From contig NC_043000.1 of NCBI RefSeq assembly GCF_006345805.1, forward strand, positions 131,998,001 through 132,062,000: a stretch of 64,000 bases of DNA, in the 5' to 3' direction. The notes below the pieces were generated by a model that saw only the letters and a program-made list of their open reading frames with translations, made no database searches and was not told the origin of the DNA. This document shows positions 15,398 to 46,658 of this stretch, one piece after another. Numbering within the stretch: position 1 is the stretch's first letter; the number at the start of each line of letters is the position of its first letter. This DNA is from Octopus sinensis (lineage: Eukaryota). The position numbers were made by a program, and so were the translations under genes.

Positions 15398-15793
15398 GAT
15401 ATATATATATATACATACACAAAATGATGGGCTTCTTTTTGTTTCCATCAACCAAATCCACTCACAAGGCTTTAGTTGAAGACACTTGCCCAAGTTTTCC
15501 ACACAGTGGGACTGAACTCTGGACGATGTGGTTGGGAATACAATATGCAGTTTTTAAATAATTTCTGTTAAAGCTTCAAATTCTACATGCATATTCACGG
15601 ATACACTGTTTAACATCATCATCAGGGTTGGACGGTTTGACCAGAGCTGGCAACTTGGAGAGCTGCACCAGACTCCAATCTGATTTGGTATGGTTTCTAA
15701 CGCTGGATATGCCTTTCCTAATGCCAACCACCTTACAGAGCATGCTGGATGCTTTTTGTGGCATAGTACAAGCACTTTTATATGGCACTGGCA

Positions 15794-16191
15794 TACTCTT
15801 TCACTTGTTTCAGTCATTTGACTGTGGCCATGCTGGAGCACTGCTTTTAGTCAAAGAAATCAACCCCAGGACTTATTCTTTGTAAGCCTAGTACTTACTC
15901 TATTGGTCTCTTTTGCCAAAGTGACAGGGAACGTAAACACACCAGCATCGGTTGTCAAGCAATGTTGAGGGACAAACACTGACACACAAACATATACACA
16001 CACATACATACATATTTATATACATATATACGATGGGCTTCTTTCAGTTTCCGTCTACCCAATCCACTCACTTTGGTCAACCCAAAGCTATAGTAGAAGA
16101 CACTTGGCCAAGATGCCACGCAGTGGGACTAAACCCGGAACCATGTGGTTGGTAAGCAAGCTACTTACCACACAGCCACTCCTGTGCCTAT
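15794..16191 (-). mobile_element. tRNA-derived SINE whose 5' head seeds the satellite
   Basis: Body, internal TA/CA microsatellite and AAGAGTA tail match other copies (e.g. 3943-4330). B-box-like GGGTTTAGTCCC near 16125-16137. The head runs directly into the array. Confidence 0.9.
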
Positions 16192-19100
16192 AGCAAGCTA
16201 CTTACCACACAGCCACTCCTGTGCCTATAGCAAGCTACTTACCACACAGCCACTCCTGTGCCTATAGCAAGCTACTTACCACACAGCCACTCCTGTGCCT
16301 ATAGCAAGCTACTTACCACACAGCCACTCCTGTGCCTATAGCAAGCTACTTACCACACAGCCACTCCTGTGCCTATAGCAAGCTACTTACCACACAGCCA
16401 CTCCTGTGCCTATAGCAAGCTACTTACCACACAGCCACTCCTGTGCCTATAGCAAGCTACTTACCACACAGCCACTCCTGTGCCTATAGCAAGCTACTTA
16501 CCACACAGCCACTCCTGTGCCTATAGCAAGCTACTTACCACACAGCCACTCCTGTGCCTATAGCAAGCTACTTACCACACAGCCACTCCTGTGCCTATAG
16601 CAAGCTACTTACCACACAGCCACTCCTGTGCCTATAGCAAGCTACTTACCACACAGCCACTCCTGTGCCTATAGCAAGCTACTTACCACACAGCCACTCC
16701 TGTGCCTATAGCAAGCTACTTACCACACAGCCACTCCTGTGCCTATAGCAAGCTACTTACCACACAGCCACTCCTGTGCCTATAGCAAGCTACTTACCAC
16801 ACAGCCACTCCTGTGCCTATAGCAAGCTACTTACCACACAGCCACTCCTGTGCCTATAGCAAGCTACTTACCACACAGCCTCTCCTTCGCCTATAGCAAG
16901 CTACTTACCACACAGCCACTCCTGTGCCTATAGCAAGCTACTTACCACACAGCCACTCCTGTGCCTATAGCAAGCTACTTACCACACAGCCACTCCTGTG
17001 CCTATAGCAAGCTACTTACCACACAGCCACTCCTGTGCCTATAGCAAGCTACTTACCACACAGCCACTCCTGTGCCTATAGCAAGCTACTTACCACACAG
17101 CCACTCCTGTGCCTATAGCAAGCTACTTACCACACAGCCACTCCTTCGCCTATAGCAAGCTACTTACCACACAGCCACTCCTGTGCCTATAGCAAGCTAC
17201 TTACCACACAGCCACTCCTGTGCCTATAGCAAGCTACTTACCACACAGCCACTCCTGTGCCTATAGCAAGCTACTTACCACACAGCCACTCCTGTGCCTA
17301 TAGCAAGCTACTTACCACACAGCCACTCCTGTGCCTATAGCAAGCTACTTACCACACAGCCACTCCTGTGCCTATAGCAAGCTACTTACCACACAGCCAC
17401 TCCTGTGCCTATAGCAAGCTACTTACCACACAGCCACTCCTGTGCCTATAGCAAGCTACTTACCACACAGCCACTCCTGTGCCTATAGCAAGCTACTTAC
17501 CACACAGCCACTCCTGTGCCTATAGCAAGCTACTTACCACACAGCCACTCCTGTGCCTATAGCAAGCTACTTACCACACAGCCACTCCTGTGCCTATAGC
17601 AAGCTACTTACCACACAGCCACTCCTGTGCCTATAGCAAGCTACTTACCACACAGCCACTCCTGTGCCTATAGCAAGCTACTTACCACACAGCCACTCCT
17701 GTGCCTATAGCAAGCTACTTACCACACAGCCACTCCTGTGCCTATAGCAAGCTACTTACCACACAGCCACTCCTGTGCCTATAGCAAGCTACTTACCACA
17801 CAGCCACTCCTGTGCCTATAGCAAGCTACTTACCACACAGCCACTCCTGTGCCTATAGCAAGCTACTTACCACACAGCCACTCCTGTGCCTATAGCAAGC
17901 TACTTACCACACAGCCACTCCTGTGCCTATAGCAAGCTACTTACCACACAGCCACTCCTGTGCCTATAGCAAGCTACTTACCACACAGCCACTCCTGTGC
18001 CTATAGCAAGCTACTTACCACACAGCCACTCCTTCGCCTATAGCAAGCTACTTACCACACAGCCACTCCTGTGCCTATAGCAAGCTACTTACCACACAGC
18101 CACTCCTGTGCCTATAGCAAGCTACTTACCACACAGCCACTCCTGTGCCTATAGCAAGCTACTTACCACACAGCCACTCCTGTGCCTATAGCAAGCTACT
18201 TACCACACAGCCACTCCTGTGCCTATAGCAAGCTACTTACCACACAGCCACTCCTGTGCCTATAGCAAGCTACTTACCACACAGCCACTCCTGTGCCTAT
18301 AGCAAGCTACTTACCACACAGCCACTCCTGTGCCTATAGCAAGCTACTTACCACACAGCCACTCCTGTGCCTATAGCAAGCTACTTACCACACAGCCACT
18401 CCTGTGCCTATAGCAAGCTACTTACCACACAGCCACTCCTGTGCCTATAGCAAGCTACTTACCACACAGCCACTCCTGTGCCTATAGCAAGCTACTTACC
18501 ACACAGCCACTCCTGTGCCTATAGCAAGCTACTTACCACACAGCCACTCCTGTGCCTATAGCAAGCTACTTACCACACAGCCACTCCTGTGCCTATAGCA
18601 AGCTACTTACCACACAGCCACTCCTGTGCCTATAGCAAGCTACTTACCACACAGCCACTCCTGTGCCTATAGCAAGCTACTTACCACACAGCCACTCCTG
18701 TGCCTATAGCAAGCTACTTACCACACAGCCACTCCTGTGCCTATAGCAAGCTACTTACCACACAGCCACTCCTGTGCCTATAGCAAGCTACTTACCACAC
18801 AGCCACTCCTGTGCCTATAGCAAGCTACTTACCACACAGCCACTCCTGTGCCTATAGCAAGCTACTTACCACACAGCCACTCCTGTGCCTATAGCAAGCT
18901 ACTTACCACACAGCCACTCCTGTGCCTATAGCAAGCTACTTACCACACAGCCACTCCTGTGCCTATAGCAAGCTACTTACCACACAGCCACTCCTGTGCC
19001 TATAGCAAGCTACTTACCACACAGCCACTCCTGTGCCTATAGCAAGCTACTTACCACACAGCCACTCCTGTGCCTATAGCAAGCTACTTACCACACAGCC

Positions 19101-22100
19101 ACTCCTGTGCCTATAGCAAGCTACTTACCACACAGCCACTCCTGTGCCTATAGCAAGCTACTTACCACACAGCCACTCCTGTGCCTATAGCAAGCTACTT
19201 ACCACACAGCCACTCCTGTGCCTATAGCAAGCTACTTACCACACAGCCACTCCTGTGCCTATAGCAAGCTACTTACCACACAGCCACTCCTGTGCCTATA
19301 GCAAGCTACTTACCACACAGCCACTCCTGTGCCTATAGCAAGCTACTTACCACACAGCCACTCCTGTGCCTATAGCAAGCTACTTACCACACAGCCACTC
19401 CTGTGCCTATAGCAAGCTACTTACCACACAGCCACTCCTGTGCCTATAGCAAGCTACTTACCACACAGCCACTCCTGTGCCTATAGCAAGCTACTTACCA
19501 CACAGCCACTCCTGTGCCTATAGCAAGCTACTTACCACACAGCCACTCCTGTGCCTATAGCAAGCTACTTACCACACAGCCACTCCTGTGCCTATAGCAA
19601 GCTACTTACCACACAGCCACTCCTGTGCCTATAGCAAGCTACTTACCACACAGCCACTCCTGTGCCTATAGCAAGCTACTTACCACACAGCCACTCCTGT
19701 GCCTATAGCAAGCTACTTACCACACAGCCACTCCTGTGCCTATAGCAAGCTACTTACCACACAGCCACTCCTGTGCCTATAGCAAGCTACTTACCACACA
19801 GCCACTCCTGTGCCTATAGCAAGCTACTTACCACACAGCCACTCCTGTGCCTATAGCAAGCTACTTACCACACAGCCACTCCTGTGCCTATAGCAAGCTA
19901 CTTACCACACAGCCACTCCTGTGCCTATAGCAAGCTACTTACCACACAGCCACTCCTGTGCCTATAGCAAGCTACTTACCACACAGCCACTCCTGTGCCT
20001 ATAGCAAGCTACTTACCACACAGCCACTCCTGTGCCTATAGCAAGCTACTTACCACACAGCCACTCCTGTGCCTATAGCAAGCTACTTACCACACAGCCA
20101 CTCCTGTGCCTATAGCAAGCTACTTACCACACAGCCACTCCTGTGCCTATAGCAAGCTACTTACCACACAGCCACTCCTGTGCCTATAGCAAGCTACTTA
20201 CCACACAGCCACTCCTGTGCCTATAGCAAGCTACTTACCACACAGCCACTCCTGTGCCTATAGCAAGCTACTTACCACACAGCCACTCCTGTGCCTATAG
20301 CAAGCTACTTACCACACAGCCACTCCTGTGCCTATAGCAAGCTACTTACCACACAGCCACTCCTGTGCCTATAGCAAGCTACTTACCACACAGCCACTCC
20401 TGTGCCTATAGCAAGCTACTTACCACACAGCCACTCCTGTGCCTATAGCAAGCTACTTACCACACAGCCACTCCTGTGCCTATAGCAAGCTACTTACCAC
20501 ACAGCCACTCCTGTGCCTATAGCAAGCTACTTACCACACAGCCACTCCTGTGCCTATAGCAAGCTACTTACCACACAGCCACTCCTGTGCCTATAGCAAG
20601 CTACTTACCACACAGCCACTCCTGTGCCTATAGCAAGCTACTTACCACACAGCCACTCCTGTGCCTATAGCAAGCTACTTACCACACAGCCACTCCTGTG
20701 CCTATAGCAAGCTACTTACCACACAGCCACTCCTGTGCCTATAGCAAGCTACTTACCACACAGCCACTCCTGTGCCTATAGCAAGCTACTTACCACACAG
20801 CCACTCCTGTGCCTATAGCAAGCTACTTACCACACAGCCACTCCTGTGCCTATAGCAAGCTACTTACCACACAGCCACTCCTGTGCCTATAGCAAGCTAC
20901 TTACCACACAGCCACTCCTGTGCCTATAGCAAGCTACTTACCACACAGCCACTCCTGTGCCTATAGCAAGCTACTTACCACACAGCCACTCCTGTGCCTA
21001 TAGCAAGCTACTTACCACACAGCCACTCCTGTGCCTATAGCAAGCTACTTACCACACAGCCACTCCTGTGCCTATAGCAAGCTACTTACCACACAGCCAC
21101 TCCTGTGCCTATAGCAAGCTACTTACCACACAGCCACTCCTGTGCCTATAGCAAGCTACTTACCACACAGCCACTCCTGTGCCTATAGCAAGCTACTTAC
21201 CACACAGCCACTCCTGTGCCTATAGCAAGCTACTTACCACACAGCCACTCCTGTGCCTATAGCAAGCTACTTACCACACAGCCACTCCTGTGCCTATAGC
21301 AAGCTACTTACCACACAGCCACTCCTGTGCCTATAGCAAGCTACTTACCACACAGCCACTCCTGTGCCTATAGCAAGCTACTTACCACACAGCCACTCCT
21401 GTGCCTATAGCAAGCTACTTACCACACAGCCACTCCTGTGCCTATAGCAAGCTACTTACCACACAGCCACTCCTGTGCCTATAGCAAGCTACTTACCACA
21501 CAGCCACTCCTGTGCCTATAGCAAGCTACTTACCACACAGCCACTCCTGTGCCTATAGCAAGCTACTTACCACACAGCCACTCCTGTGCCTATAGCAAGC
21601 TACTTACCACACAGCCACTCCTGTGCCTATAGCAAGCTACTTACCACACAGCCACTCCTGTGCCTATAGCAAGCTACTTACCACACAGCCACTCCTGTGC
21701 CTATAGCAAGCTACTTACCACACAGCCACTCCTGTGCCTATAGCAAGCTACTTACCACACAGCCACTCCTGTGCCTATAGCAAGCTACTTACCACACAGC
21801 CACTCCTGTGCCTATAGCAAGCTACTTACCACACAGCCACTCCTGTGCCTATAGCAAGCTACTTACCACACAGCCACTCCTGTGCCTATAGCAAGCTACT
21901 TACCACACAGCCACTCCTGTGCCTATAGCAAGCTACTTACCACACAGCCACTCCTGTGCCTATAGCAAGCTACTTACCACACAGCCACTCCTGTGCCTAT
22001 AGCAAGCTACTTACCACACAGCCACTCCTGTGCCTATAGCAAGCTACTTACCACACAGCCACTCCTGTGCCTATAGCAAGCTACTTACCACACAGCCACT

Positions 22101-25100
22101 CCTGTGCCTATAGCAAGCTACTTACCACACAGCCACTCCTGTGCCTATAGCAAGCTACTTACCACACAGCCACTCCTGTGCCTATAGCAAGCTACTTACC
22201 ACACAGCCACTCCTGTGCCTATAGCAAGCTACTTACCACACAGCCACTCCTGTGCCTATAGCAAGCTACTTACCACACAGCCACTCCTGTGCCTATAGCA
22301 AGCTACTTACCACACAGCCACTCCTGTGCCTATAGCAAGCTACTTACCACACAGCCACTCCTGTGCCTATAGCAAGCTACTTACCACACAGCCACTCCTG
22401 TGCCTATAGCAAGCTACTTACCACACAGCCACTCCTGTGCCTATAGCAAGCTACTTACCACACAGCCACTCCTGTGCCTATAGCAAGCTACTTACCACAC
22501 AGCCACTCCTGTGCCTATAGCAAGCTACTTACCACACAGCCACTCCTTCGCCTATAGCAAGCTACTTACCACACAGCCACTCCTGTGCCTATAGCAAGCT
22601 ACTTACCACACAGCCACTCCTGTGCCTATAGCAAGCTACTTACCACACAGCCACTCCTGTGCCTATAGCAAGCTACTTACCACACAGCCACTCCTGTGCC
22701 TATAGCAAGCTACTTACCACACAGCCACTCCTGTGCCTATAGCAAGCTACTTACCACACAGCCACTCCTGTGCCTATAGCAAGCTACTTACCACACAGCC
22801 ACTCCTGTGCCTATAGCAAGCTACTTACCACACAGCCACTCCTGTGCCTATAGCAAGCTACTTACCACACAGCCACTCCTGTGCCTATAGCAAGCTACTT
22901 ACCACACAGCCACTCCTGTGCCTATAGCAAGCTACTTACCACACAGCCACTCCTGTGCCTATAGCAAGCTACTTACCACACAGCCACTCCTGTGCCTATA
23001 GCAAGCTACTTACCACACAGCCACTCCTGTGCCTATAGCAAGCTACTTACCACACAGCCACTCCTGTGCCTATAGCAAGCTACTTACCACACAGCCACTC
23101 CTGTGCCTATAGCAAGCTACTTACCACACAGCCACTCCTGTGCCTATAGCAAGCTACTTACCACACAGCCACTCCTGTGCCTATAGCAAGCTACTTACCA
23201 CACAGCCACTCCTGTGCCTATAGCAAGCTACTTACCACACAGCCACTCCTGTGCCTATAGCAAGCTACTTACCACACAGCCACTCCTGTGCCTATAGCAA
23301 GCTACTTACCACACAGCCACTCCTGTGCCTATAGCAAGCTACTTACCACACAGCCACTCCTGTGCCTATAGCAAGCTACTTACCACACAGCCACTCCTGT
23401 GCCTATAGCAAGCTACTTACCACACAGCCACTCCTGTGCCTATAGCAAGCTACTTACCACACAGCCACTCCTGTGCCTATAGCAAGCTACTTACCACACA
23501 GCCACTCCTGTGCCTATAGCAAGCTACTTACCACACAGCCACTCCTGTGCCTATAGCAAGCTACTTACCACACAGCCACTCCTGTGCCTATAGCAAGCTA
23601 CTTACCACACAGCCACTCCTGTGCCTATAGCAAGCTACTTACCACACAGCCACTCCTGTGCCTATAGCAAGCTACTTACCACACAGCCACTCCTGTGCCT
23701 ATAGCAAGCTACTTACCACACAGCCACTCCTGTGCCTATAGCAAGCTACTTACCACACAGCCACTCCTGTGCCTATAGCAAGCTACTTACCACACAGCCA
23801 CTCCTGTGCCTATAGCAAGCTACTTACCACACAGCCACTCCTGTGCCTATAGCAAGCTACTTACCACACAGCCACTCCTGTGCCTATAGCAAGCTACTTA
23901 CCACACAGCCACTCCTGTGCCTATAGCAAGCTACTTACCACACAGCCACTCCTGTGCCTATAGCAAGCTACTTACCACACAGCCACTCCTGTGCCTATAG
24001 CAAGCTACTTACCACACAGCCACTCCTGTGCCTATAGCAAGCTACTTACCACACAGCCACTCCTGTGCCTATAGCAAGCTACTTACCACACAGCCACTCC
24101 TGTGCCTATAGCAAGCTACTTACCACACAGCCACTCCTGTGCCTATAGCAAGCTACTTACCACACAGCCACTCCTGTGCCTATAGCAAGCTACTTACCAC
24201 ACAGCCACTCCTGTGCCTATAGCAAGCTACTTACCACACAGCCACTCCTGTGCCTATAGCAAGCTACTTACCACACAGCCACTCCTGTGCCTATAGCAAG
24301 CTACTTACCACACAGCCACTCCTGTGCCTATAGCAAGCTACTTACCACACAGCCACTCCTGTGCCTATAGCAAGCTACTTACCACACAGCCACTCCTGTG
24401 CCTATAGCAAGCTACTTACCACACAGCCACTCCTTCGCCTATAGCAAGCTACTTACCACACAGCCACTCCTGTGCCTATAGCAAGCTACTTACCACACAG
24501 CCACTCCTGTGCCTATAGCAAGCTACTTACCACACAGCCACTCCTGTGCCTATAGCAAGCTACTTACCACACAGCCACTCCTGTGCCTATAGCAAGCTAC
24601 TTACCACACAGCCACTCCTGTGCCTATAGCAAGCTACTTACCACACAGCCACTCCTGTGCCTATAGCAAGCTACTTACCACACAGCCACTCCTGTGCCTA
24701 TAGCAAGCTACTTACCACACAGCCACTCCTGTGCCTATAGCAAGCTACTTACCACACAGCCACTCCTGTGCCTATAGCAAGCTACTTACCACACAGCCAC
24801 TCCTGTGCCTATAGCAAGCTACTTACCACACAGCCACTCCTGTGCCTATAGCAAGCTACTTACCACACAGCCACTCCTGTGCCTATAGCAAGCTACTTAC
24901 CACACAGCCACTCCTGTGCCTATAGCAAGCTACTTACCACACAGCCACTCCTGTGCCTATAGCAAGCTACTTACCACACAGCCACTCCTGTGCCTATAGC
25001 AAGCTACTTACCACACAGCCACTCCTGTGCCTATAGCAAGCTACTTACCACACAGCCACTCCTGTGCCTATAGCAAGCTACTTACCACACAGCCACTCCT

Positions 25101-28100
25101 GTGCCTATAGCAAGCTACTTACCACACAGCCACTCCTGTGCCTATAGCAAGCTACTTACCACACAGCCACTCCTGTGCCTATAGCAAGCTACTTACCACA
25201 CAGCCACTCCTGTGCCTATAGCAAGCTACTTACCACACAGCCACTCCTGTGCCTATAGCAAGCTACTTACCACACAGCCACTCCTGTGCCTATAGCAAGC
25301 TACTTACCACACAGCCACTCCTGTGCCTATAGCAAGCTACTTACCACACAGCCACTCCTGTGCCTATAGCAAGCTACTTACCACACAGCCACTCCTGTGC
25401 CTATAGCAAGCTACTTACCACACAGCCACTCCTGTGCCTATAGCAAGCTACTTACCACACAGCCACTCCTGTGCCTATAGCAAGCTACTTACCACACAGC
25501 CACTCCTGTGCCTATAGCAAGCTACTTACCACACAGCCACTCCTGTGCCTATAGCAAGCTACTTACCACACAGCCACTCCTGTGCCTATAGCAAGCTACT
25601 TACCACACAGCCACTCCTGTGCCTATAGCAAGCTACTTACCACACAGCCACTCCTGTGCCTATAGCAAGCTACTTACCACACAGCCACTCCTGTGCCTAT
25701 AGCAAGCTACTTACCACACAGCCACTCCTGTGCCTATAGCAAGCTACTTACCACACAGCCACTCCTGTGCCTATAGCAAGCTACTTACCACACAGCCACT
25801 CCTGTGCCTATAGCAAGCTACTTACCACACAGCCACTCCTGTGCCTATAGCAAGCTACTTACCACACAGCCACTCCTGTGCCTATAGCAAGCTACTTACC
25901 ACACAGCCACTCCTGTGCCTATAGCAAGCTACTTACCACACAGCCACTCCTGTGCCTATAGCAAGCTACTTACCACACAGCCACTCCTGTGCCTATAGCA
26001 AGCTACTTACCACACAGCCACTCCTGTGCCTATAGCAAGCTACTTACCACACAGCCACTCCTGTGCCTATAGCAAGCTACTTACCACACAGCCACTCCTG
26101 TGCCTATAGCAAGCTACTTACCACACAGCCACTCCTGTGCCTATAGCAAGCTACTTACCACACAGCCACTCCTGTGCCTATAGCAAGCTACTTACCACAC
26201 AGCCACTCCTGTGCCTATAGCAAGCTACTTACCACACAGCCACTCCTGTGCCTATAGCAAGCTACTTACCACACAGCCACTCCTGTGCCTATAGCAAGCT
26301 ACTTACCACACAGCCACTCCTGTGCCTATAGCAAGCTACTTACCACACAGCCACTCCTGTGCCTATAGCAAGCTACTTACCACACAGCCACTCCTGTGCC
26401 TATAGCAAGCTACTTACCACACAGCCACTCCTGTGCCTATAGCAAGCTACTTACCACACAGCCACTCCTGTGCCTATAGCAAGCTACTTACCACACAGCC
26501 ACTCCTGTGCCTATAGCAAGCTACTTACCACACAGCCACTCCTGTGCCTATAGCAAGCTACTTACCACACAGCCACTCCTGTGCCTATAGCAAGCTACTT
26601 ACCACACAGCCACTCCTGTGCCTATAGCAAGCTACTTACCACACAGCCACTCCTGTGCCTATAGCAAGCTACTTACCACACAGCCACTCCTGTGCCTATA
26701 GCAAGCTACTTACCACACAGCCACTCCTGTGCCTATAGCAAGCTACTTACCACACAGCCACTCCTGTGCCTATAGCAAGCTACTTACCACACAGCCACTC
26801 CTGTGCCTATAGCAAGCTACTTACCACACAGCCACTCCTGTGCCTATAGCAAGCTACTTACCACACAGCCACTCCTGTGCCTATAGCAAGCTACTTACCA
26901 CACAGCCACTCCTGTGCCTATAGCAAGCTACTTACCACACAGCCACTCCTGTGCCTATAGCAAGCTACTTACACCACAGCCACTCCTGTGCCTATAGCAA
27001 GCTACTTACCACACAGCCACTCCTGTGCCTATAGCAAGCTACTTACCACACAGCCACTCCTGTGCCTATAGCAAGCTACTTACCACACAGCCACTCCTGT
27101 GCCTATAGCAAGCTACTTACCACACAGCCACTCCTGTGCCTATAGCAAGCTACTTACCACACAGCCACTCCTGTGCCTATAGCAAGCTACTTACCACACA
27201 GCCACTCCTGTGCCTATAGCAAGCTACTTACCACACAGCCACTCCTGTGCCTATAGCAAGCTACTTACCACACAGCCACTCCTGTGCCTATAGCAAGCTA
27301 CTTACCACACAGCCACTCCTGTGCCTATAGCAAGCTACTTACCACACAGCCACTCCTGTGCCTATAGCAAGCTACTTACCACACAGCCACTCCTGTGCCT
27401 ATAGCAAGCTACTTACCACACAGCCACTCCTGTGCCTATAGCAAGCTACTTACCACACAGCCACTCCTGTGCCTATAGCAAGCTACTTACCACACAGCCA
27501 CTCCTGTGCCTATAGCAAGCTACTTACCACACAGCCACTCCTGTGCCTATAGCAAGCTACTTACCACACAGCCACTCCTGTGCCTATAGCAAGCTACTTA
27601 CCACACAGCCACTCCTGTGCCTATAGCAAGCTACTTACCACACAGCCACTCCTGTGCCTATAGCAAGCTACTTACCACACAGCCACTCCTGTGCCTATAG
27701 CAAGCTACTTACCACACAGCCACTCCTGTGCCTATAGCAAGCTACTTACCACACAGCCACTCCTGTGCCTATAGCAAGCTACTTACCACACAGCCACTCC
27801 TGTGCCTATAGCAAGCTACTTACCACACAGCCACTCCTGTGCCTATAGCAAGCTACTTACCACACAGCCACTCCTGTGCCTATAGCAAGCTACTTACCAC
27901 ACAGCCACTCCTGTGCCTATAGCAAGCTACTTACCACACAGCCACTCCTGTGCCTATAGCAAGCTACTTACCACACAGCCACTCCTGTGCCTATAGCAAG
28001 CTACTTACCACACAGCCACTCCTGTGCCTATAGCAAGCTACTTACCACACAGCCACTCCTGTGCCTATAGCAAGCTACTTACCACACAGCCACTCCTGTG

Positions 28101-31100
28101 CCTATAGCAAGCTACTTACCACACAGCCACTCCTGTGCCTATAGCAAGCTACTTACCACACAGCCACTCCTGTGCCTATAGCAAGCTACTTACCACACAG
28201 CCACTCCTGTGCCTATAGCAAGCTACTTACCACACAGCCACTCCTGTGCCTATAGCAAGCTACTTACCACACAGCCACTCCTGTGCCTATAGCAAGCTAC
28301 TTACCACACAGCCACTCCTGTGCCTATAGCAAGCTACTTACCACACAGCCACTCCTGTGCCTATAGCAAGCTACTTACCACACAGCCACTCCTGTGCCTA
28401 TAGCAAGCTACTTACCACACAGCCACTCCTGTGCCTATAGCAAGCTACTTACCACACAGCCACTCCTGTGCCTATAGCAAGCTACTTACCACACAGCCAC
28501 TCCTGTGCCTATAGCAAGCTACTTACCACACAGCCACTCCTGTGCCTATAGCAAGCTACTTACCACACAGCCACTCCTGTGCCTATAGCAAGCTACTTAC
28601 CACACAGCCACTCCTGTGCCTATAGCAAGCTACTTACCACACAGCCACTCCTGTGCCTATAGCAAGCTACTTACCACACAGCCACTCCTGTGCCTATAGC
28701 AAGCTACTTACCACACAGCCACTCCTGTGCCTATAGCAAGCTACTTACCACACAGCCACTCCTGCCTATAGCAAGCTACTTACCACACAGCCACTCCTGT
28801 GCCTATAGCAAGCTACTTACCACACAGCCACTCCTGTGCCTATAGCAAGCTACTTACCACACAGCCACTCCTGTGCCTATAGCAAGCTACTTACCACACA
28901 GCCACTCCTGTGCCTATAGCAAGCTACTTACCACACAGCCACTCCTGTGCCTATAGCAAGCTACTTACCACACAGCCACTCCTGTGCCTATAGCAAGCTA
29001 CTTACCACACAGCCACTCCTGTGCCTATAGCAAGCTACTTACCACACAGCCACTCCTGTGCCTATAGCAAGCTACTTACCACACAGCCACTCCTGTGCCT
29101 ATAGCAAGCTACTTACCACACAGCCACTCCTGTGCCTATAGCAAGCTACTTACCACACAGCCACTCCTGTGCCTATAGCAAGCTACTTACCACACAGCCA
29201 CTCCTGTGCCTATAGCAAGCTACTTACCACACAGCCACTCCTGTGCCTATAGCAAGCTACTTACCACACAGCCACTCCTGTGCCTATAGCAAGCTACTTA
29301 CCACACAGCCACTCCTGTGCCTATAGCAAGCTACTTACCACACAGCCACTCCTGTGCCTATAGCAAGCTACTTACCACACAGCCACTCCTGTGCCTATAG
29401 CAAGCTACTTACCACACAGCCACTCCTGTGCCTATAGCAAGCTACTTACCACACAGCCACTCCTGTGCCTATAGCAAGCTACTTACCACACAGCCACTCC
29501 TGTGCCTATAGCAAGCTACTTACCACACAGCCACTCCTGTGCCTATAGCAAGCTACTTACCACACAGCCACTCCTGTGCCTATAGCAAGCTACTTACCAC
29601 ACAGCCACTCCTGTGCCTATAGCAAGCTACTTACCACACAGCCACTCCTGTGCCTATAGCAAGCTACTTACCACACAGCCACTCCTGTGCCTATAGCAAG
29701 CTACTTACCACACAGCCACTCCTGTGCCTATAGCAAGCTACTTACCACACAGCCACTCCTGTGCCTATAGCAAGCTACTTACCACACAGCCACTCCTGTG
29801 CCTATAGCAAGCTACTTACCACACAGCCACTCCTGTGCCTATAGCAAGCTACTTACCACACAGCCACTCCTGTGCCTATAGCAAGCTACTTACCACACAG
29901 CCACTCCTGTGCCTATAGCAAGCTACTTACCACACAGCCACTCCTGTGCCTATAGCAAGCTACTTACCACACAGCCACTCCTGTGCCTATAGCAAGCTAC
30001 TTACCACACAGCCACTCCTGTGCCTATAGCAAGCTACTTACCACACAGCCACTCCTGTGCCTATAGCAAGCTACTTACCACACAGCCACTCCTGTGCCTA
30101 TAGCAAGCTACTTACCACACAGCCACTCCTGTGCCTATAGCAAGCTACTTACCACACAGCCACTCCTGTGCCTATAGCAAGCTACTTACCACACAGCCAC
30201 TCCTGTGCCTATAGCAAGCTACTTACCACACAGCCACTCCTGTGCCTATAGCAAGCTACTTACCACACAGCCACTCCTGTGCCTATAGCAAGCTACTTAC
30301 CACACAGCCACTCCTGTGCCTATAGCAAGCTACTTACCACACAGCCACTCCTGTGCCTATAGCAAGCTACTTACCACACAGCCACTCCTGTGCCTATAGC
30401 AAGCTACTTACCACACAGCCACTCCTGTGCCTATAGCAAGCTACTTACCACACAGCCACTCCTGTGCCTATAGCAAGCTACTTACCACACAGCCACTCCT
30501 GTGCCTATAGCAAGCTACTTACCACACAGCCACTCCTGTGCCTATAGCAAGCTACTTACCACACAGCCACTCCTGTGCCTATAGCAAGCTACTTACCACA
30601 CAGCCACTCCTGTGCCTATAGCAAGCTACTTACCACACAGCCACTCCTTCGCCTATAGCAAGCTACTTACCACACAGCCACTCCTGTGCCTATAGCAAGC
30701 TACTTACCACACAGCCACTCCTGTGCCTATAGCAAGCTACTTACCACACAGCCACTCCTGTGCCTATAGCAAGCTACTTACCACACAGCCACTCCTGTGC
30801 CTATAGCAAGCTACTTACCACACAGCCACTCCTTCGCCTATAGCAAGCTACTTACCACACAGCCACTCCTGTGCCTATAGCAAGCTACTTACCACACAGC
30901 CACTCCTGTGCCTATAGCAAGCTACTTACCACACAGCCACTCCTGTGCCTATAGCAAGCTACTTACCACACAGCCACTCCTGTGCCTATAGCAAGCTACT
31001 TACCACACAGCCACTCCTGTGCCTATAGCAAGCTACTTACCACACAGCCACTCCTGTGCCTATAGCAAGCTACTTACCACACAGCCACTCCTGTGCCTAT

Positions 31101-34100
31101 AGCAAGCTACTTACCACACAGCCACTCCTGTGCCTATAGCAAGCTACTTACCACACAGCCACTCCTGTGCCTATAGCAAGCTACTTACCACACAGCCACT
31201 CCTGTGCCTATAGCAAGCTACTTACCACACAGCCACTCCTGTGCCTATAGCAAGCTACTTACCACACAGCCACTCCTGTGCCTATAGCAAGCTACTTACC
31301 ACACAGCCACTCCTTCGCCTATAGCAAGCTACTTACCACACAGCCACTCCTGTGCCTATAGCAAGCTACTTACCACACAGCCACTCCTGTGCCTATAGCA
31401 AGCTACTTACCACACAGCCACTCCTGTGCCTATAGCAAGCTACTTACCACACAGCCACTCCTGTGCCTATAGCAAGCTACTTACCACACAGCCACTCCTG
31501 TGCCTATAGCAAGCTACTTACCACACAGCCACTCCTGTGCCTATAGCAAGCTACTTACCACACAGCCACTCCTGTGCCTATAGCAAGCTACTTACCACAC
31601 AGCCACTCCTGTGCCTATAGCAAGCTACTTACCACACAGCCACTCCTGTGCCTATAGCAAGCTACTTACCACACAGCCACTCCTGTGCCTATAGCAAGCT
31701 ACTTACCACACAGCCACTCCTGTGCCTATAGCAAGCTACTTACCACACAGCCACTCCTGTGCCTATAGCAAGCTACTTACCACACAGCCACTCCTTGCCT
31801 ATAGCAAGCTACTTACCACACAGCCACTCCTGTGCCTATAGCAAGCTACTTACCACACAGCCACTCTGTGCCTATAGCAAGCTACTTACCACACAGCCAC
31901 TCCTGTGCCTATAGCAAGCTACTTACCACACAGCCACTCCTGTGCCTATAGCAAGCTACTTACCACACAGCCACTCCTGTGCCTATAGCAAGCTACTTAC
32001 CACACAGCCACTCCTGTGCCTATAGCAAGCTACTTACCACACAGCCACTCCTGTGCCTATAGCAAGCTACTTACCACACAGCCACTCCTGTGCCTATAGC
32101 AAGCTACTTACCACACAGCCACTCCTGTGCCTATAGCAAGCTACTTACCACACAGCCACTCCTGTGCCTATAGCAAGCTACTTACCACACAGCCACTCCT
32201 GTGCCTATAGCAAGCTACTTACCACACAGCCACTCCTGTGCCTATAGCAAGCTACTTACCACACAGCCACTCCTTCGCCTATAGCAAGCTACTTACCACA
32301 CAGCCACTCCTGTGCCTATAGCAAGCTACTTACCACACAGCCACTCCTGTGCCTATAGCAAGCTACTTACCACACAGCCACTCCTGTGCCTATAGCAAGC
32401 TACTTACCACACAGCCACTCCTGTGCCTATAGCAAGCTACTTACCACACAGCCACTCCTGTGCCTATAGCAAGCTACTTACCACACAGCCACTCCTGTGC
32501 CTATAGCAAGCTACTTACCACACAGCCACTCCTGTGCCTATAGCAAGCTACTTACCACACAGCCACTCCTGTGCCTATAGCAAGCTACTTACCACACAGC
32601 CACTCCTGTGCCTATAGCAAGCTACTTACCACACAGCCACTCCTGTGCCTATAGCAAGCTACTTACCACACAGCCACTCCTGTGCCTATAGCAAGCTACT
32701 TACCACACAGCCACTCCTGTGCCTATAGCAAGCTACTTACCACACAGCCACTCCTGTGCCTATAGCAAGCTACTTACCACACAGCCACTCCTGTGCCTAT
32801 AGCAAGCTACTTACCACACAGCCACTCCTGTGCCTATAGCAAGCTACTTACCACACAGCCACTCCTGTGCCTATAGCAAGCTACTTACCACACAGCCACT
32901 CCTGTGCCTATAGCAAGCTACTTACCACACAGCCACTCCTGTGCCTATAGCAAGCTACTTACCACACAGCCACTCCTGTGCCTATAGCAAGCTACTTACC
33001 ACACAGCCACTCCTGTGCCTATAGCAAGCTACTTACCACACAGCCACTCCTGTGCCTATAGCAAGCTACTTACCACACAGCCACTCCTGTGCCTATAGCA
33101 AGCTACTTACCACACAGCCACTCCTGTGCCTATAGCAAGCTACTTACCACACAGCCACTCCTGTGCCTATAGCAAGCTACTTACCACACAGCCACTCCTG
33201 TGCCTATAGCAAGCTACTTACCACACAGCCACTCCTGTGCCTATAGCAAGCTACTTACCACACAGCCACTCCTGTGCCTATAGCAAGCTACTTACCACAC
33301 AGCCACTCCTGTGCCTATAGCAAGCTACTTACCACACAGCCACTCCTGTGCCTATAGCAAGCTACTTACCACACAGCCACTCCTGTGCCTATAGCAAGCT
33401 ACTTACCACACAGCCACTCCTGTGCCTATAGCAAGCTACTTACCACACAGCCACTCCTGTGCCTATAGCAAGCTACTTACCACACAGCCACTCCTGTGCC
33501 TATAGCAAGCTACTTACCACACAGCCACTCCTGTGCCTATAGCAAGCTACTTACCACACAGCCACTCCTGTGCCTATAGCAAGCTACTTACCACACAGCC
33601 ACTCCTGTGCCTATAGCAAGCTACTTACCACACAGCCACTCCTGTGCCTATAGCAAGCTACTTACCACACAGCCACTCCTGTGCCTATAGCAAGCTACTT
33701 ACCACACAGCCACTCCTGTGCCTATAGCAAGCTACTTACCACACAGCCACTCCTGTGCCTATAGCAAGCTACTTACCACACAGCCACTCCTGTGCCTATA
33801 GCAAGCTACTTACCACACAGCCACTCCTGTGCCTATAGCAAGCTACTTACCACACAGCCACTCCTGTGCCTATAGCAAGCTACTTACCACACAGCCACTC
33901 CTGTGCCTATAGCAAGCTACTTACCACACAGCCACTCCTGTGCCTATAGCAAGCTACTTACCACACAGCCACTCCTGTGCCTATAGCAAGCTACTTACCC
34001 ACACAGCCACTCCTGTGCCTATAGCAAGCTACTTACCACACAGCCACTCCTGTGCCTATAGCAAGCTACTTACCACACAGCCACTCCTGTGCCTATAGCA

Positions 34101-37100
34101 AGCTACTTACCACACAGCCACTCCTGTGCCTATAGCAAGCTACTTACCACACAGCCACTCCTGTGCCTATAGCAAGCTACTTACCACACAGCCACTCCTG
34201 TGCCTATAGCAAGCTACTTACCCACAGCCACTCCTGTGCCTATAGCAAGCTACTTACCACACAGCCACTCCTTGCCTATAGCAAGCTACTTACCACACAG
34301 CCACTCCTGTGCCTATAGCAAGCTACTTACCACACAGCCACTCCTGTGCCTATAGCAAGCTACTTACCACACAGCCACTCCTGTGCCTATAGCAAGCTAC
34401 TTACCACACAGCCACTCCTGTGCCTATAGCAAGCTACTTACCACACAGCCACTCCTGTGCCTATAGCAAGCTACTTACCACACAGCCACTCCTGTGCCTA
34501 TAGCAAGCTACTTACCACACAGCCACTCCTGTGCCTATAGCAAGCTACTTACCACACAGCCACTCCTGTGCCTATAGCAAGCTACTTACCACACAGCCAC
34601 TCCTGTGCCTATAGCAAGCTACTTACCACACAGCCACTCCTGTGCCTATAGCAAGCTACTTACCACACAGCCACTCCTGTGCCTATAGCAAGCTACTTAC
34701 CACACAGCCACTCCTGTGCCTATAGCAAGCTACTTACCACACAGCCACTCCTGTGCCTATAGCAAGCTACTTACCACACAGCCACTCCTGTGCCTATAGC
34801 AAGCTACTTACCACACAGCCACTCCTGTGCCTATAGCAAGCTACTTACCACACAGCCACTCCTTCGCCTATAGCAAGCTACTTACCACACAGCCACTCCT
34901 GTGCCTATAGCAAGCTACTTACCACACAGCCACTCCTTCGCCTATAGCAAGCTACTTACCACACAGCCACTCCTGTGCCTATAGCAAGCTACTTACCACA
35001 CAGCCACTCCTGTGCCTATAGCAAGCTACTTACCACACAGCCACTCCTGTGCCTATAGCAAGCTACTTACCACACAGCCACTCCTGTGCCTATAGCAAGC
35101 TACTTACCACACAGCCACTCCTGTGCCTATAGCAAGCTACTTACCACACAGCCACTCCTGTGCCTATAGCAAGCTACTTACCACACAGCCACTCCTGTGC
35201 CTATAGCAAGCTACTTACCACACAGCCACTCCTGTGCCTATAGCAAGCTACTTACCACACAGCCACTCCTGTGCCTATAGCAAGCTACTTACCACACAGC
35301 CACTCCTGTGCCTATAGCAAGCTACTTACCACACAGCCACTCCTGTGCCTATAGCAAGCTACTTACCACACAGCCACTCCTGTGCCTATAGCAAGCTACT
35401 TACCACACAGCCACTCCTGTGCCTATAGCAAGCTACTTACCACACAGCCACTCCTGTGCCTATAGCAAGCTACTTACCACACAGCCACTCCTGTGCCTAT
35501 AGCAAGCTACTTACCACACAGCCACTCCTTCGCCTATAGCAAGCTACTTACCACACAGCCACTCCTGTGCCTATAGCAAGCTACTTACCACACAGCCACT
35601 CCTGTGCCTATAGCAAGCTACTTACCACACAGCCACTCCTGTGCCTATAGCAAGCTACTTACCACACAGCCACTCCTGTGCCTATAGCAAGCTACTTACC
35701 ACACAGCCACTCCTGTGCCTATAGCAAGCTACTTACCACACAGCCACTCCTGTGCCTATAGCAAGCTACTTACCACACAGCCACTCCTGTGCCTATAGCA
35801 AGCTACTTACCACACAGCCACTCCTGTGCCTATAGCAAGCTACTTACCACACAGCCACTCCTTCGCCTATAGCAAGCTACTTACCACACAGCCACTCCTG
35901 TGCCTATAGCAAGCTACTTACCACACAGCCACTCCTGTGCCTATAGCAAGCTACTTACCACACAGCCACTCCTGTGCCTATAGCAAGCTACTTACCACAC
36001 AGCCACTCCTGTGCCTATAGCAAGCTACTTACCACACAGCCACTCCTGTGCCTATAGCAAGCTACTTACCACACAGCCACTCCTGTGCCTATAGCAAGCT
36101 ACTTACCACACAGCCACTCCTGTGCCTATAGCAAGCTACTTACCACACAGCCACTCCTGTGCCTATAGCAAGCTACTTACCACACAGCCACTCCTGTGCC
36201 TATAGCAAGCTACTTACCACACAGCCACTCCTGTGCCTATAGCAAGCTACTTACCACACAGCCACTCCTGTGCCTATAGCAAGCTACTTACCACACAGCC
36301 ACTCCTGTGCCTATAGCAAGCTACTTACCACACAGCCTCTCCTTCGCCTATAGCAAGCTACTTACCACACAGCCACTCCTGTGCCTATAGCAAGCTACTT
36401 ACCACACAGCCACTCCTGTGCCTATAGCAAGCTACTTACCACACAGCCACTCCTGTGCCTATAGCAAGCTACTTACCACACAGCCACTCCTGTGCCTATA
36501 GCAAGCTACTTACCACACAGCCACTCCTGTGCCTATAGCAAGCTACTTACCACACAGCCACTCCTGTGCCTATAGCAAGCTACTTACCACACAGCCACTC
36601 CTGTGCCTATAGCAAGCTACTTACCACACAGCCACTCCTTCGCCTATAGCAAGCTACTTACCACACAGCCACTCCTGTGCCTATAGCAAGCTACTTACCA
36701 CACAGCCACTCCTGTGCCTATAGCAAGCTACTTACCACACAGCCACTCCTGTGCCTATAGCAAGCTACTTACCACACAGCCACTCCTGTGCCTATAGCAA
36801 GCTACTTACCACACAGCCACTCCTGTGCCTATAGCAAGCTACTTACCACACAGCCACTCCTGTGCCTATAGCAAGCTACTTACCACACAGCCACTCCTGT
36901 GCCTATAGCAAGCTACTTACCACACAGCCACTCCTGTGCCTATAGCAAGCTACTTACCACACAGCCACTCCTGTGCCTATAGCAAGCTACTTACCACACA
37001 GCCACTCCTGTGCCTATAGCAAGCTACTTACCACACAGCCACTCCTGTGCCTATAGCAAGCTACTTACCACACAGCCACTCCTGTGCCTATAGCAAGCTA

Positions 37101-38936
37101 CTTACCACACAGCCACTCCTGTGCCTATAGCAAGCTACTTACCACACAGCCACTCCTGTGCCTATAGCAAGCTACTTACCACACAGCCACTCCTTCGCCT
37201 ATAGCAAGCTACTTACCACACAGCCACTCCTGTGCCTATAGCAAGCTACTTACCACACAGCCACTCCTGTGCCTATAGCAAGCTACTTACCACACAGCCA
37301 CTCCTGTGCCTATAGCAAGCTACTTACCACACAGCCTCTCCTTCGCCTATAGCAAGCTACTTACCACACAGCCACTCCTGTGCCTATAGCAAGCTACTTA
37401 CCACACAGCCACTCCTGTGCCTATAGCAAGCTACTTACCACACAGCCCTCCTGTGCCTATAGCAAGCTACTTACCACACAGCCACTCCTGTGCCTATAGC
37501 AAGCTACTTACCACACAGCCACTCCTGTGCCTATAGCAAGCTACTTACCACACAGCCACTCCTGTGCCTATAGCAAGCTACTTACCACACAGCCACTCCT
37601 GTGCCTATAGCAAGCTACTTACCACACAGCCACTCCTGTGCCTATAGCAAGCTACTTACCACACAGCCACTCCTGTGCCTATAGCAAGCTACTTACCACA
37701 CAGCCACTCCTGTGCCTATAGCAAGCTACTTACCACACAGCCACTCCTGTGCCTATAGCAAGCTACTTACCACACAGCCACTCCTGTGCCTATAGCAAGC
37801 TACTTACCACACACAGCCACTCCTGTGCCTATAGCAAGCTACTTACCACACAGCCACTCCTTCGCCTATAGCAAGCTACTTACCACACAGCCACTCCTGT
37901 GCCTATAGCAAGCTACTTACCACACAGCCACTCCTGTGCCTATAGCAAGCTACTTACCACACAGCCACTCCTGGCCTATAGCAAGCTACTTACCACACAG
38001 CCACTCCTGTGCCTATAGCAAGCTACTTACCACACAGCCACTCCTGTGCCTATAGCAAGCTACTTACCACACAGCCACTCCTGTGCCTATAGCAAGCTAC
38101 TTACCACACAGCCACTCCTGTGCCTATAGCAAGCTACTTACCACACAGCCACTCCTGTGCCTATAGCAAGCTACTTACCACACAGCCACTCCTGTGCCTA
38201 TAGCAAGCTACTTACCACACAGCTCTCTTGCCTATAGCAAGCTACTTACCACACAGCCACTCCTGTGCCTATAGCAAGCTACTACCACACAGCCACTCCT
38301 TGCCTATAGCAAGCTACTTACCCCACAGCCACTCCTGTGCCTATAGCAAGCTACTTACCACACAGCACTCCTGTGCCTATAGCAAGCTACTTACCACACA
38401 GCCACTCCTGTGCCTATAGCAAGCTACTTACCACACAGCCACTCCTGTGCCTATAGCAAGCTACTTACCACACAGCCACTCTGTGCCTATAGCAAGCTAC
38501 TTACCACACAGCCACTCCTGTGCCTATAGCAAGCTACTTACCACACAGCCACTCCTTGCCTATAGCAAGCTACTTACCACACAGCCACTCCTGTGCCTAT
38601 AGCAAGCTACTTACCACACAGCCACTCCTGTGCTGCCTATAGCAAGCTACTTACCACACAGCCACTCCTGTGCCTATAGCAAGCTACTTACCACACAGCC
38701 TCTACTTCCTATAGCAAGCTACTTACCCCACAGCCACTCCTGTGCCTATAGCAAGCTACTTACCACACAGCACCTCTCCTGTGCCTATAGCAAGCTACTT
38801 ACCACACAGCCACTCCTGTGCCTATAGCAAGCTACTTACCACACAGCCACTCCTGTGCCTATAGCAAGCTACTTACCACACAGCCACTCCTGTGCCTATA
38901 GCAAGCTACTTACCACACAGCCACTCCTGTGCCTAT
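16155..38936. repeat. 37-bp tandem satellite, about 616 copies (AGCAAGCTACTTACCACACAGCCACTCCTGTGCCTAT)
   Basis: Period read directly (units start at 16155, 16192, ...). 22782 bp / 37 = about 616. Almost all units are identical. Confidence 0.99.
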
Positions 38937-39520: not shown

Positions 39521-39522
39521 AA

Positions 39523-45724: not shown

Positions 45725-46658
<934 letters not shown>

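What the first reader, a model, noticed from the sequence alone, without database searches (positions are those of the whole stretch)
16155..38936. A 22.8-kb satellite born from the 5' head of a single SINE copy
Seen: about 616 near-identical 37-bp units. On the minus strand each unit reads ATAGGCACAGGAGTGGCTGTGTGGTAAGTAGCTTGCT, which is the first ~34 nt of SINE family A (compare 3943, 13625, 61672). The innermost unit continues without a break into the rest of that SINE (16154 down to 15794). The array starts and ends on unit boundaries. Established: satellites can originate from transposable elements. Inference: this is a very young, locus-specific satellite still attached to its parent element, a rare snapshot of satellite birth. 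I do not know whether it has been described.
Basis: partly seen in the sequence, partly recalled or inferred. Interest (0 to 1): 0.8.

Follow-up and report, generated by a model that had tools for sequence, protein, structure and literature searches.

The report
SINE-head tandem array in octopus
A 22.8-kb run of 616 copies of the first 37 bases of a very abundant octopus SINE is still joined to its parent element; it is the largest case found here of this SINE family's tendency to duplicate its own 5' end, a kind of "SINE-derived satellite" so far described in reptiles.

Summary
Window 16155-38936 holds 616 head-to-tail 37-bp units, 578 of them identical. The array starts on a unit boundary and runs without a break into a full SINE copy (16154 down to 15794, minus strand).

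The interpretation needs correcting in three ways.
- The exact unit-to-unit junction is unique to this locus: all 581 genomic copies lie in the window. But the same 37-bp duplication (junction GCTTGCT|ATAGGC) occurs at 12 other loci, including an 18.8-unit array on scaffold C18.
- Duplication of the SINE's 5' end is common across the family. About 295 further head-to-head junctions exist, with periods of 26-37 bp. That is about 37 times more than the same test gives for the B-box part of the SINE.
- An 87-bp head-derived array family sits on scaffold C6.

The duplicated unit nearly always restarts at the SINE's 5' terminus and breaks in the anticodon-like loop. I infer that seed duplications form during retrotransposition and that the array then expanded in place. 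This architecture is published for squamate reptiles; I found no cephalopod report.

The copy number rests on a PacBio long-read assembly (inferred from matching assembly statistics) that I could not check against reads. Verdict: real, probably neutral, and a new member of a known kind.

The parts
16155..38936 (-). Array of 616 units of 37 bp, equal to SINE positions 1-37. Each unit carries an A-box-like motif, TGGCTGTGTGG.
   Evidence: The A-box likeness is by inspection against the pol III A-box consensus TRGCNNAGTGG as I recall it (10 of 11 positions).
16155..16191 (-). Innermost unit. This is the parent SINE's own head. It is followed by TACCAACC instead of another ATAGGC.
   Evidence: alignment A1.
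15794..16154 (-). Rest of the parent SINE: 3' half of the anticodon-like stem, B-box-like segment, body, internal TA/TG microsatellite and AAAGAGTA-type tail.
   Evidence: BLAST against another copy: 84.5% identity over 406 bp. 8.4% mismatches to an 11-copy consensus, plus a 5-bp and a roughly 7-bp deletion.
16125..16142 (-). B-box-like segment (GGTTCCGGGTTTAGTCCC) of the parent SINE. It occurs once only and is not part of the repeated unit.
   Evidence: By inspection against the B-box consensus GGTTCGANNCC as I recall it.
37800..38936 (-). Distal (outer) 31 units, which carry most of the one-off small indels: 0.84 edits per unit, against 0.04 in the 390 units nearest the SINE body.
38937..38961 (-). 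Upstream member of a degenerate direct repeat (TGCTGGTGCTGCATAAAAAGTACT-like) that abuts the array's outer end. It may be an old target-site duplication.
   Evidence: the alignment score with the downstream member exceeds 99.9% of random window pairs. Ambiguous, because the downstream flank is a SINE-B-like repeat and the upstream motif resembles it.
15765..15793 (-). Downstream member of the same degenerate direct repeat, placed directly after the SINE tail.

Best explanation
This is a SINE-derived tandem array. It is satellite-like in length, with a minisatellite-sized unit. It was made from the 5'-terminal 37 nt of one copy of a very abundant octopus SINE that is tRNA-like by inspection.

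Step 1 (inferred): a seed of two or a few heads arose by a process anchored at the element's 5' terminus. The most likely process is that the reverse transcriptase reached the 5' end of the SINE RNA during target-primed insertion and jumped back into the single-stranded anticodon-like loop of a SINE RNA, with 1-2 nt of microhomology, then copied the head again.

Step 2 (inferred): at this locus the seed expanded in place to hundreds of units by replication slippage or unequal exchange. This happened recently relative to the age of the parent copy.

The array has no open reading frame. Each unit carries an A-box-like motif but no B box, so it is most likely a neutral, length-unstable locus rather than a functional element.

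Shown: the anatomy, the uniqueness of the exact array, the family-wide excess of head duplications, and the positions of the junctions. Inferred: the template switch, the mode of expansion and the neutrality.
For: Anatomy.

Uniqueness: all 581 genomic copies of the exact 32-nt junction lie in the window. The upstream flank is single-copy.

Family-wide head duplication:
- The head-then-head pattern occurs 891 times in the genome, 596 of them in this array. That leaves 295 elsewhere.
- The same design gives 7 for the B-box segment and 12 for a body segment.
- The anchor words are about equally abundant: head 20-mer 87,684 copies, B-box 19-mer 75,878 copies. The excess is therefore about 37-fold.

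Junction positions, from the first 66 non-array junctions:
- Periods are 29 bp (21), 33 bp (23), 31 bp (9), 27 bp (4), 26 bp (3) and other (6).
- Nearly all restart at TATAGGC, ATAGGC, TAGGC or GGC, within about 4 nt of the SINE 5' end.
- Nearly all break between GGTAAG and GCTTGCT, which is the loop of the GGTAAG/CTTACC hairpin (fold).
- Restarts 5-30 nt after the B box are rare as dispersed events: 5, against about 278.

Recurrence: both the 37-bp and the 33-bp junction types occur on both SINE subfamily backgrounds (alignment A1). This argues for repeated origin rather than one multi-head lineage.

A graded series of arrays exists:
- 2-5 units at about 57 loci in the first quarter of the genome.
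- 9.8 decayed units at 83% identity.
- 18.8 units at 99% identity.
- 616 units here.

Age contrast: the array shows 0.32% edits, while the parent body shows 8.4% mismatches to the consensus.

Precedent: squamate SINE-derived satellites have the same architecture, reach nearly 950 units per locus (described in the paper's discussion as up to 1000), and become more homogeneous with length (PMC10702118).
Against: - No read-level evidence was available, so the copy number and the near-identity come from a long-read consensus that tends to smooth tandem arrays.
- The template-switch step is inferred from junction positions only. DNA-level slippage at 1-2-nt microhomologies would give the same junction sequences.
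- The subfamily argument rests on 11 copies.
- Predicted single-strand structure of the unit is no stronger than shuffled controls (z about -1), so no special slippage-prone fold was found.
- ARAGORN and Rfam do not call the head a tRNA.
- The heterogeneity gradient (outer end noisy, inner end clean) is not what symmetric homogenisation predicts and remains unexplained.
Confidence: 0.6

Rival explanations
1. Assembly artefact or over-extension. The real allele holds only a few, or far fewer, head units, and the assembler produced or inflated the 22.8-kb array.
For: - The genome statistics (2,719,151,902 bases, 13,516 sequences) match the PacBio plus Hi-C assembly of Octopus sinensis listed in PMC10700109. 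An array longer than most such reads cannot be sized reliably.
- One-off small indels typical of long-read consensus errors cluster in the outer 31 units.
- No alternative haplotype contig exists to compare with.
Against: - The array lies inside contiguous sequence with no N.
- It contains 18 scattered units with a two-base variant (GGCGAAGG). That variant is a genuine minor variant of the SINE family, present about 188 times elsewhere, so the array is not a copy-paste of one consensus unit.
- Comparable arrays exist at independent loci: C18 with 18.8 units and the C6 clusters.
- From general experience, assemblers collapse such arrays more often than they expand them.
Confidence: 0.12
2. The seed duplication arose after insertion, purely at the DNA level, by replication slippage or unequal exchange. 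Reverse transcription was not involved.
For: - The junctions are compatible with 1-2-nt microhomology.
- Tandem duplications also occur in other SINE segments, at low frequency.
- The later growth from a few to 616 units must in any case have happened at the DNA level.
Against: - A DNA-level process has no reason to start the duplicated segment at the element's 5' terminus. Yet about 60 of 66 sampled junctions restart within about 4 nt of it, and very few include flanking DNA.
- Nor does it explain the 37-fold excess over the B-box segment.
Confidence: 0.2
3. The multi-head state was inherited. A master SINE with two or three 37-bp heads was transcribed from an upstream A box and retrotransposed, and this locus received an already duplicated head before expanding.
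For: - The identical junction GCTTGCT|ATAGGC occurs at 12 other loci.
- L001, 2.75 Mb away on the same scaffold, has three heads, and its second head carries the same GGCGAAGG variant that is the array's minor unit.
- The C18 array begins with a 5'-truncated unit, as a 5'-truncated cDNA would.
Against: - The 37-bp junction occurs on both SINE subfamily backgrounds, and so does the 33-bp junction.
- GGCGAAGG is present in about 0.2% of all heads, so sharing it could be chance.
Confidence: 0.2
4. The array is functional, for example as a pol III factor-binding platform, a chromatin boundary or a source of non-coding RNA.
For: Each unit holds an A-box-like motif, so there are 616 copies. The innermost unit together with the single B-box-like segment resembles a complete pol III promoter by sequence inspection only.
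Against: - By established knowledge of type 2 pol III promoters, TFIIIC recruitment depends mainly on the B box, which the units lack.
- No open frame runs through the unit on either strand (read by eye from the unit sequence). Window ORFs of 110 aa or more all lie outside the array, and the 10 tested had no Pfam match.
- The array is a single locus with no sign of conservation.
- Decayed arrays such as L002 show that such arrays are left to degenerate.
Confidence: 0.05

Closest known systems
SINE-derived satellites (sSats) of squamate reptiles (Vassetzky, Kosushkin & Ryskov 2023, Mob DNA 14:21; PMC10702118)
   Same: - Tandem repeats of a portion of a tRNA-related SINE, with one longer terminal unit that continues to the SINE terminus.
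- Many loci with 2-8 units and a few very long ones (nearly 950 units at the longest named locus; 'up to 1000' in the paper's discussion).
- Homogeneity rises with array length.
- Different unit types arise independently.
   Different: - The host is a cephalopod mollusc. The authors state it is uncertain whether sSats exist outside squamates.
- The unit here is the extreme 5' end (positions 1-37, A box only). The main snake unit is positions 42-108 and includes the B box.
- One locus dominates here, rather than hundreds to thousands of loci.
- This locus is 32.8 Mb from the nearer scaffold end, so it is not subtelomeric.
- The array is more homogeneous (99.7%) than the 94% reported for the 320-unit Indian cobra locus, the only long locus for which that paper gives a figure.
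Tandem 5' 'monomers' of mouse L1 elements (from my own knowledge, not tested here)
   Same: A retrotransposon carries a variable number of head-to-tail copies of its promoter-bearing 5' segment at its 5' end, with the outermost copy often truncated.
   Different: - L1 monomers are about 200 bp long, number a few per element, act as pol II promoters and are inherited through retrotransposition.
- Here the unit is 37 bp and lacks half of the pol III promoter. The large array is a single genomic locus.
tRNA-related tandem families of amphibians (newt PolIII/TAN, Xenopus OAX, Rana/polIII, Hy/polIII), as reviewed in PMC10702118
   Same: Tandemly repeated DNA containing a tRNA-like pol III head.
   Different: - Their units are 200-360 nt or longer, and no parent SINE is known for them.
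- Here the parent SINE is physically attached and has more than 87,000 conserved heads in the genome.
Tandem-like whole-SINE multimers in bivalves (PMC11481361) and TE-derived satellites in general (reviews cited in PMC10702118)
   Same: SINEs of molluscs can form tandem structures, and satellites can originate from transposable elements.
   Different: The bivalve cases are multimers of whole SINEs, 2-15 elements of at least 150 bp each, with or without target-site duplications between them. They are not amplifications of a 37-bp terminal fragment.

Membership tests
SINE-derived satellite (sSat sensu Vassetzky et al. 2023) | Head-to-tail tandem repeats whose unit is a portion of a SINE. | tested here: met
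   616 units equal to SINE positions 1-37.
SINE-derived satellite (sSat sensu Vassetzky et al. 2023) | A longer terminal unit that continues to the SINE terminus. | tested here: met
   The innermost unit runs into the full SINE body and tail, 16154 down to 15794. The same holds at C18.
SINE-derived satellite (sSat sensu Vassetzky et al. 2023) | A 'library' of many short loci plus a few long, more homogeneous ones. | tested here: met
   295 junctions elsewhere, mostly 1-4 per locus. The series runs from 9.8 units at 83% identity, through 18.8 units at 99%, to 616 units at 99.7%.
SINE-derived satellite (sSat sensu Vassetzky et al. 2023) | Preference for subtelomeric regions. | tested here: not met
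   The array lies at 132.01-132.04 Mb of a 164.8-Mb scaffold. This is a tendency in that paper rather than a requirement, and only one locus is judged here.
Classical satellite DNA | Long homogeneous tandem arrays. | tested here: met
   22.8 kb at 99.7% identity.
Classical satellite DNA | High genomic abundance in many arrays, or association with heterochromatin. | tested here: not met
   All 581 exact junctions lie at this one locus. 22.8 kb of 2.72 Gb is about 0.0008% of the genome. Heterochromatin status cannot be tested with these tools.
tRNA-derived SINE (the parent element) | Internal pol III promoter with A and B boxes in a tRNA-like 5' region. | tested here: inconclusive
   A-box-like TGGCTGTGTGG and B-box-like GGTTCAGTCCC are seen by inspection, and a GGTAAG/CTTACC hairpin with a 7-nt loop is predicted. 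ARAGORN finds no tRNA and Rfam gives no tRNA match at E up to 1.
tRNA-derived SINE (the parent element) | Short, non-coding, highly dispersed copies ending in a simple-repeat tail. | tested here: met
   Copies of about 400 bp with an AAAGAGTA-type tail. At least 12 copies or fragments occur in the window. 87,684 conserved head 20-mers are spread evenly over both strands of the genome.

The most novel reading that the evidence does not exclude
Retrotransposition itself seeds satellites. In this octopus SINE family, the reverse transcriptase repeatedly jumps from the RNA's 5' end back into the anticodon-like loop. New insertions are therefore born with 2-5 tandem heads, of 26-37 bp or a whole 87-bp head. 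These ready-made seeds then grow into arrays of tens to hundreds of units. This would be a general, sequence-specified route from SINE to satellite, seen here at every stage within one genome.
Probability: 0.3. Interest if true: 0.6.

Novelty: new member of a known kind. Interest (0 to 1): 0.42.

Why it matters
How satellites begin is usually inferred long after the event. This genome appears to hold the whole series for one SINE family:
- single heads (more than 87,000);
- 2-5 heads at a few hundred loci;
- a decayed 10-unit array;
- a fresh 19-unit array;
- a 616-unit array still joined to its parent.

The junctions are anchored at the element's 5' terminus and land in one small loop. That gives a concrete, testable hypothesis for how the first duplication forms.

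The finding would also extend SINE-derived satellites from squamate reptiles to molluscs, suggesting the phenomenon is general. In practice, the locus is a likely hypervariable marker and a likely weak point in octopus assemblies.

Tried and rejected
- Genome-wide satellite: rejected. The exact junction is confined to this locus.
- Second allele or paralogue for comparing length: none. A 2.16-kb upstream flank matches only itself over its full length; the other hits are an 870-bp dispersed repeat.
- Clean target-site duplication: not found. There is only a degenerate direct repeat of about 25 bp abutting both ends, confounded by SINE-B-like sequence in the downstream flank and in the upstream repeat motif.
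- Slippage-prone secondary structure: not supported. Three units folded as DNA on either strand give z-scores of -1.3 and -0.9.
- tRNA identity of the head: no call from ARAGORN or Rfam.
- Higher-order periodicity of the GGCGAAGG variant units: none. Spacing is irregular, from 2 to 168 units.
- Coding potential: the unit has stops in every frame when read through successive units (read by eye). Window ORFs of 110 aa or more all lie outside the array, and the 10 tested had no Pfam match.
- GGCGAAGG as a sequencing error: rejected. It occurs about 188 times elsewhere in the genome.
- Fetching random genome regions for an unbiased SINE sample, and fetching the C6 arrays: not possible.
- Literature: three full-text searches found no report of cephalopod SINE-derived tandem arrays. 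The library does not hold many subscription papers, so absence is weak evidence.
Full report
**What is there**

Tandem Repeats Finder reports a single array at window 16155-38936: period 37, 616.0 copies, 99% matches and no indels at the alignment level. I read the minus strand and split at each ATAGG. The outermost unit abuts unrelated sequence exactly at ATAGGC. The innermost unit is followed not by another ATAGGC but by TACCAACCACATGG and the whole remainder of a SINE, down to about 15794.

**Where the window comes from**

The window is G000:C4:131,998,001-132,062,000. The assembly has 2,719,151,902 bases in 13,516 sequences. These figures match the Octopus sinensis PacBio plus Hi-C assembly GCA_006345805.1 as tabulated in PMC10700109: 13,516 scaffolds and 2719.2 Mb. 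The species assignment is an inference from that match.

**The parent element**

- The SINE is about 400 bp long. It has an internal TA/TG microsatellite and an AAAGAGTA-type tail.
- A 20-nt word from its head occurs 87,684 times in the genome, evenly on both strands.
- By inspection the head carries an A-box-like TGGCTGTGTGG and a B-box-like GGTTCAGTCCC. Between them a GGTAAG/CTTACC hairpin with a 7-nt loop is predicted.
- ARAGORN and Rfam do not call it a tRNA, so 'tRNA-derived' rests on resemblance only.
- First heads at independent loci also begin ATAGG. The ATA at the start of the unit therefore belongs to the SINE, and the unit is SINE positions 1-37.
- Each unit thus carries the A-box-like motif but no B box.

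**Is the array locus-specific?**

Yes for the exact sequence, no for the phenomenon.

- The 32-nt unit-to-unit junction occurs 581 times in the genome, and all 581 are in the window.
- The 2.16-kb upstream flank matches only itself over its whole length, so the assembly holds no second allele or paralogue.
- A pattern for the same junction with the CpG-intact or TG head variants finds 28 junctions at 11 other loci. L001, 2.75 Mb away on the same scaffold, has three heads of the same type.
- One of those loci, on C18, is an array of 18.8 units at 99% identity. It is attached to a young SINE body, 2.8% from the consensus. Its outermost unit is 5'-truncated.

**Head duplication is a property of the family**

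- A pattern asking for the 3' part of the head followed within 5-30 nt by the 5' part occurs 891 times in the genome. 596 of these are in this array, leaving 295 elsewhere.
- The same design applied to the B-box segment gives 7 hits, and to a body segment 12 hits.
- The anchor words are about equally common: 87,684 for the head and 75,878 for the B box. Head duplication is therefore about 37 times more frequent per copy.
- I tallied by hand the first 66 non-array junctions, from roughly the first quarter of the genome and about 57 loci. The periods are 33 bp (23), 29 bp (21), 31 bp (9), 27 bp (4), 26 bp (3) and other (6).
- Nearly all of them restart at TATAGGC, ATAGGC, TAGGC or GGC, within about 4 nt of the SINE's 5' terminus.
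- Nearly all break between GGTAAG and GCTTGCT, which is in or just beyond the 7-nt loop of the hairpin.
- Very few junctions include foreign bases.
- Restarts 5-30 nt after the B box are rare as dispersed events: 5 in the genome.
- That last search also found 24 junctions at a spacing of about 87 bp, in three clusters on C6 (112.404, 112.475-112.478 and 112.617 Mb). This is a second satellite-like family, whose unit is the whole 87-bp head and which again restarts at ATAGGC. I could not fetch it.
- An older example is L002 on C5: 9.8 units of 33 bp at 83% identity.

**One lineage or recurrent origin?**

In an alignment of 11 copies (A1), linked diagnostic sites define two SINE subfamilies, for example CCTAGCATT with ACTGGGCT against CCCAACATC with ACTAGGCT. 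The 37-bp junction occurs on both backgrounds: C25 on one, and C18, L008 and the window parent on the other. The 33-bp junction does too: L003 on one, and L009 and L010 on the other. This favours repeated formation of the same junctions over descent from a single multi-head master. The sample is small, however.

One hint points the other way. The minor unit of the array reads GGCGAAGG, occurs in 18 scattered units, and also forms the second head of L001. But that variant occurs about 188 times elsewhere in the genome, so chance sharing is possible. The same count shows that the variant is real biology and not a consensus error.

**Mechanism**

I propose two steps, both inferred.

First, a seed of two to five heads forms by a process that 'knows' the element's 5' terminus. 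The simplest candidate is reverse transcriptase reaching the 5' end of the SINE RNA during insertion. It then switches template into the accessible loop of a SINE RNA, using 1-2 nt of microhomology (the TA or T shared by the 5' end and the loop), and copies the head again. Template switching by LINE reverse transcriptases is established knowledge from other systems; I did not test it here. A purely DNA-level slippage would give the same junction sequences. It would not explain the anchoring at the terminus or the 37-fold excess.

Second, at this locus the seed grew to hundreds of units by replication slippage or unequal exchange. The array shows 0.32% edits. The attached SINE body differs from the family consensus at 8.4% of sites and has two deletions. 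The expansion, or its last homogenisation, is therefore much younger than the insertion.

A degenerate direct repeat of about 25 bp abuts both the outer end of the array and the SINE tail. Its alignment score exceeds 99.9% of random pairs. This fits an old target-site duplication enclosing array plus SINE. The downstream flank is SINE-B-like repeat sequence and the upstream repeat motif resembles it, so the point is not settled.

**Function**

I see no sign of one.
- Read through successive units, every frame on both strands meets a stop (by eye). Window ORFs of 110 aa or more all lie outside the array, and the 10 I tested had no Pfam match.
- The units lack the B box, which by established knowledge is the main TFIIIC anchor.
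- Predicted single-strand folding is no better than shuffles.
- Decayed arrays elsewhere show that such arrays are left to degenerate.

**Caveats on the assembly**

The copy number and the extreme homogeneity come from a long-read consensus that I could not check against reads. One-off small indels cluster in the outer 31 units (0.84 edits per unit). The rate falls to 0.16 in units 32-226 and to 0.04 in the 390 units next to the SINE body. This gradient may reflect consensus quality, or polar growth next to the SINE body; I cannot tell which.

I rate a gross artefact as unlikely, at about 0.12. My reasons are the scattered genuine variant units, the independent arrays on C18 and C6, and the gap-free context.

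**Comparison with what is known**

The architecture matches the SINE-derived satellites described in 56 squamate genomes (PMC10702118). Shared features are:
- tandem units from part of a tRNA-related SINE;
- one longer terminal unit running to the SINE terminus;
- many loci with few units and a few with nearly 950 ('up to 1000' in that paper's discussion);
- homogeneity rising with array length;
- independent origins of different units.

Those authors say it is uncertain whether such satellites exist outside squamates. The differences here are:
- a mollusc host;
- a unit from the extreme 5' end, with an A box only;
- one dominant locus instead of hundreds or thousands;
- a non-subtelomeric position;
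- higher homogeneity.

Bivalve 'tandem-like SINEs' are multimers of whole elements (PMC11481361). Mouse L1 5' monomers are a functional analogy that I recall but did not test. Three full-text searches found no cephalopod report.

**Verdict**

The array is a real SINE-derived tandem array and a new member of a known kind. It is not a unique birth event. It is the largest member of a graded series that this SINE family produces. The terminus-anchored, loop-targeted junction pattern is the most interesting by-product, because it gives a testable model for how the seeds form.

Noticed in passing
L052:1213-1909 (G000:C18:42,214,5xx-42,215,2xx): A second array of the same 37-bp SINE-head unit: 18.8 units at 99% identity, with the CpG-intact form GGCGCAGG. 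It is attached to a young SINE body, and its outermost unit is 5'-truncated (it starts at GCAGGAG).
   Followed up: yes
G000:C6:112,404,272-112,405,015; 112,475,447-112,477,575; 112,616,701-112,617,273: Three clusters, in mixed orientation within 213 kb, of junctions spaced about 87 bp apart. In each, the B-box end of the SINE head (…CTTGGGCA) is followed directly by ATAGGCGCAGG. This appears to be a satellite-like family whose unit is the whole 87-bp head. Many hits show single-base indels, so the true arrays are probably larger.
   Followed up: no
L002:1375-1695 (G000:C5:73.045 Mb): An older, decayed mini-array of 9.8 head units of 33 bp at 83% identity, followed by a diverged SINE body.
   Followed up: partly
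window 45723-46662: Another copy of the same SINE, on the minus strand (head 46662-46454, tail 45977-45723). Its internal TA microsatellite has grown to 567 bp (45932-46498). This family therefore has two expansion-prone modules: the head and the internal microsatellite.
   Followed up: partly
window 39521-40390: A dispersed repeat of about 870 bp, with dozens of copies at 82-90% identity on many scaffolds. Its identity was not determined.
   Followed up: no
window 16155-38936: Unit heterogeneity falls steadily from the outer end (0.84 edits per unit in units 1-31) to the end next to the SINE body (0.04 in units 227-616). This could reflect polar growth of the array or uneven consensus quality.
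   Followed up: partly
G000:C3:22,518,553 (+) and 22,519,751 (-): Two double-headed SINE copies of the 29-bp junction type, lying in opposite orientation 1.2 kb apart. They may be an inverted duplication.
   Followed up: no
window 50375-50462: A perfect 31-bp tandem repeat of 2.8 copies, directly next to a TA microsatellite and a SINE head fragment (50479-50675).
   Followed up: no
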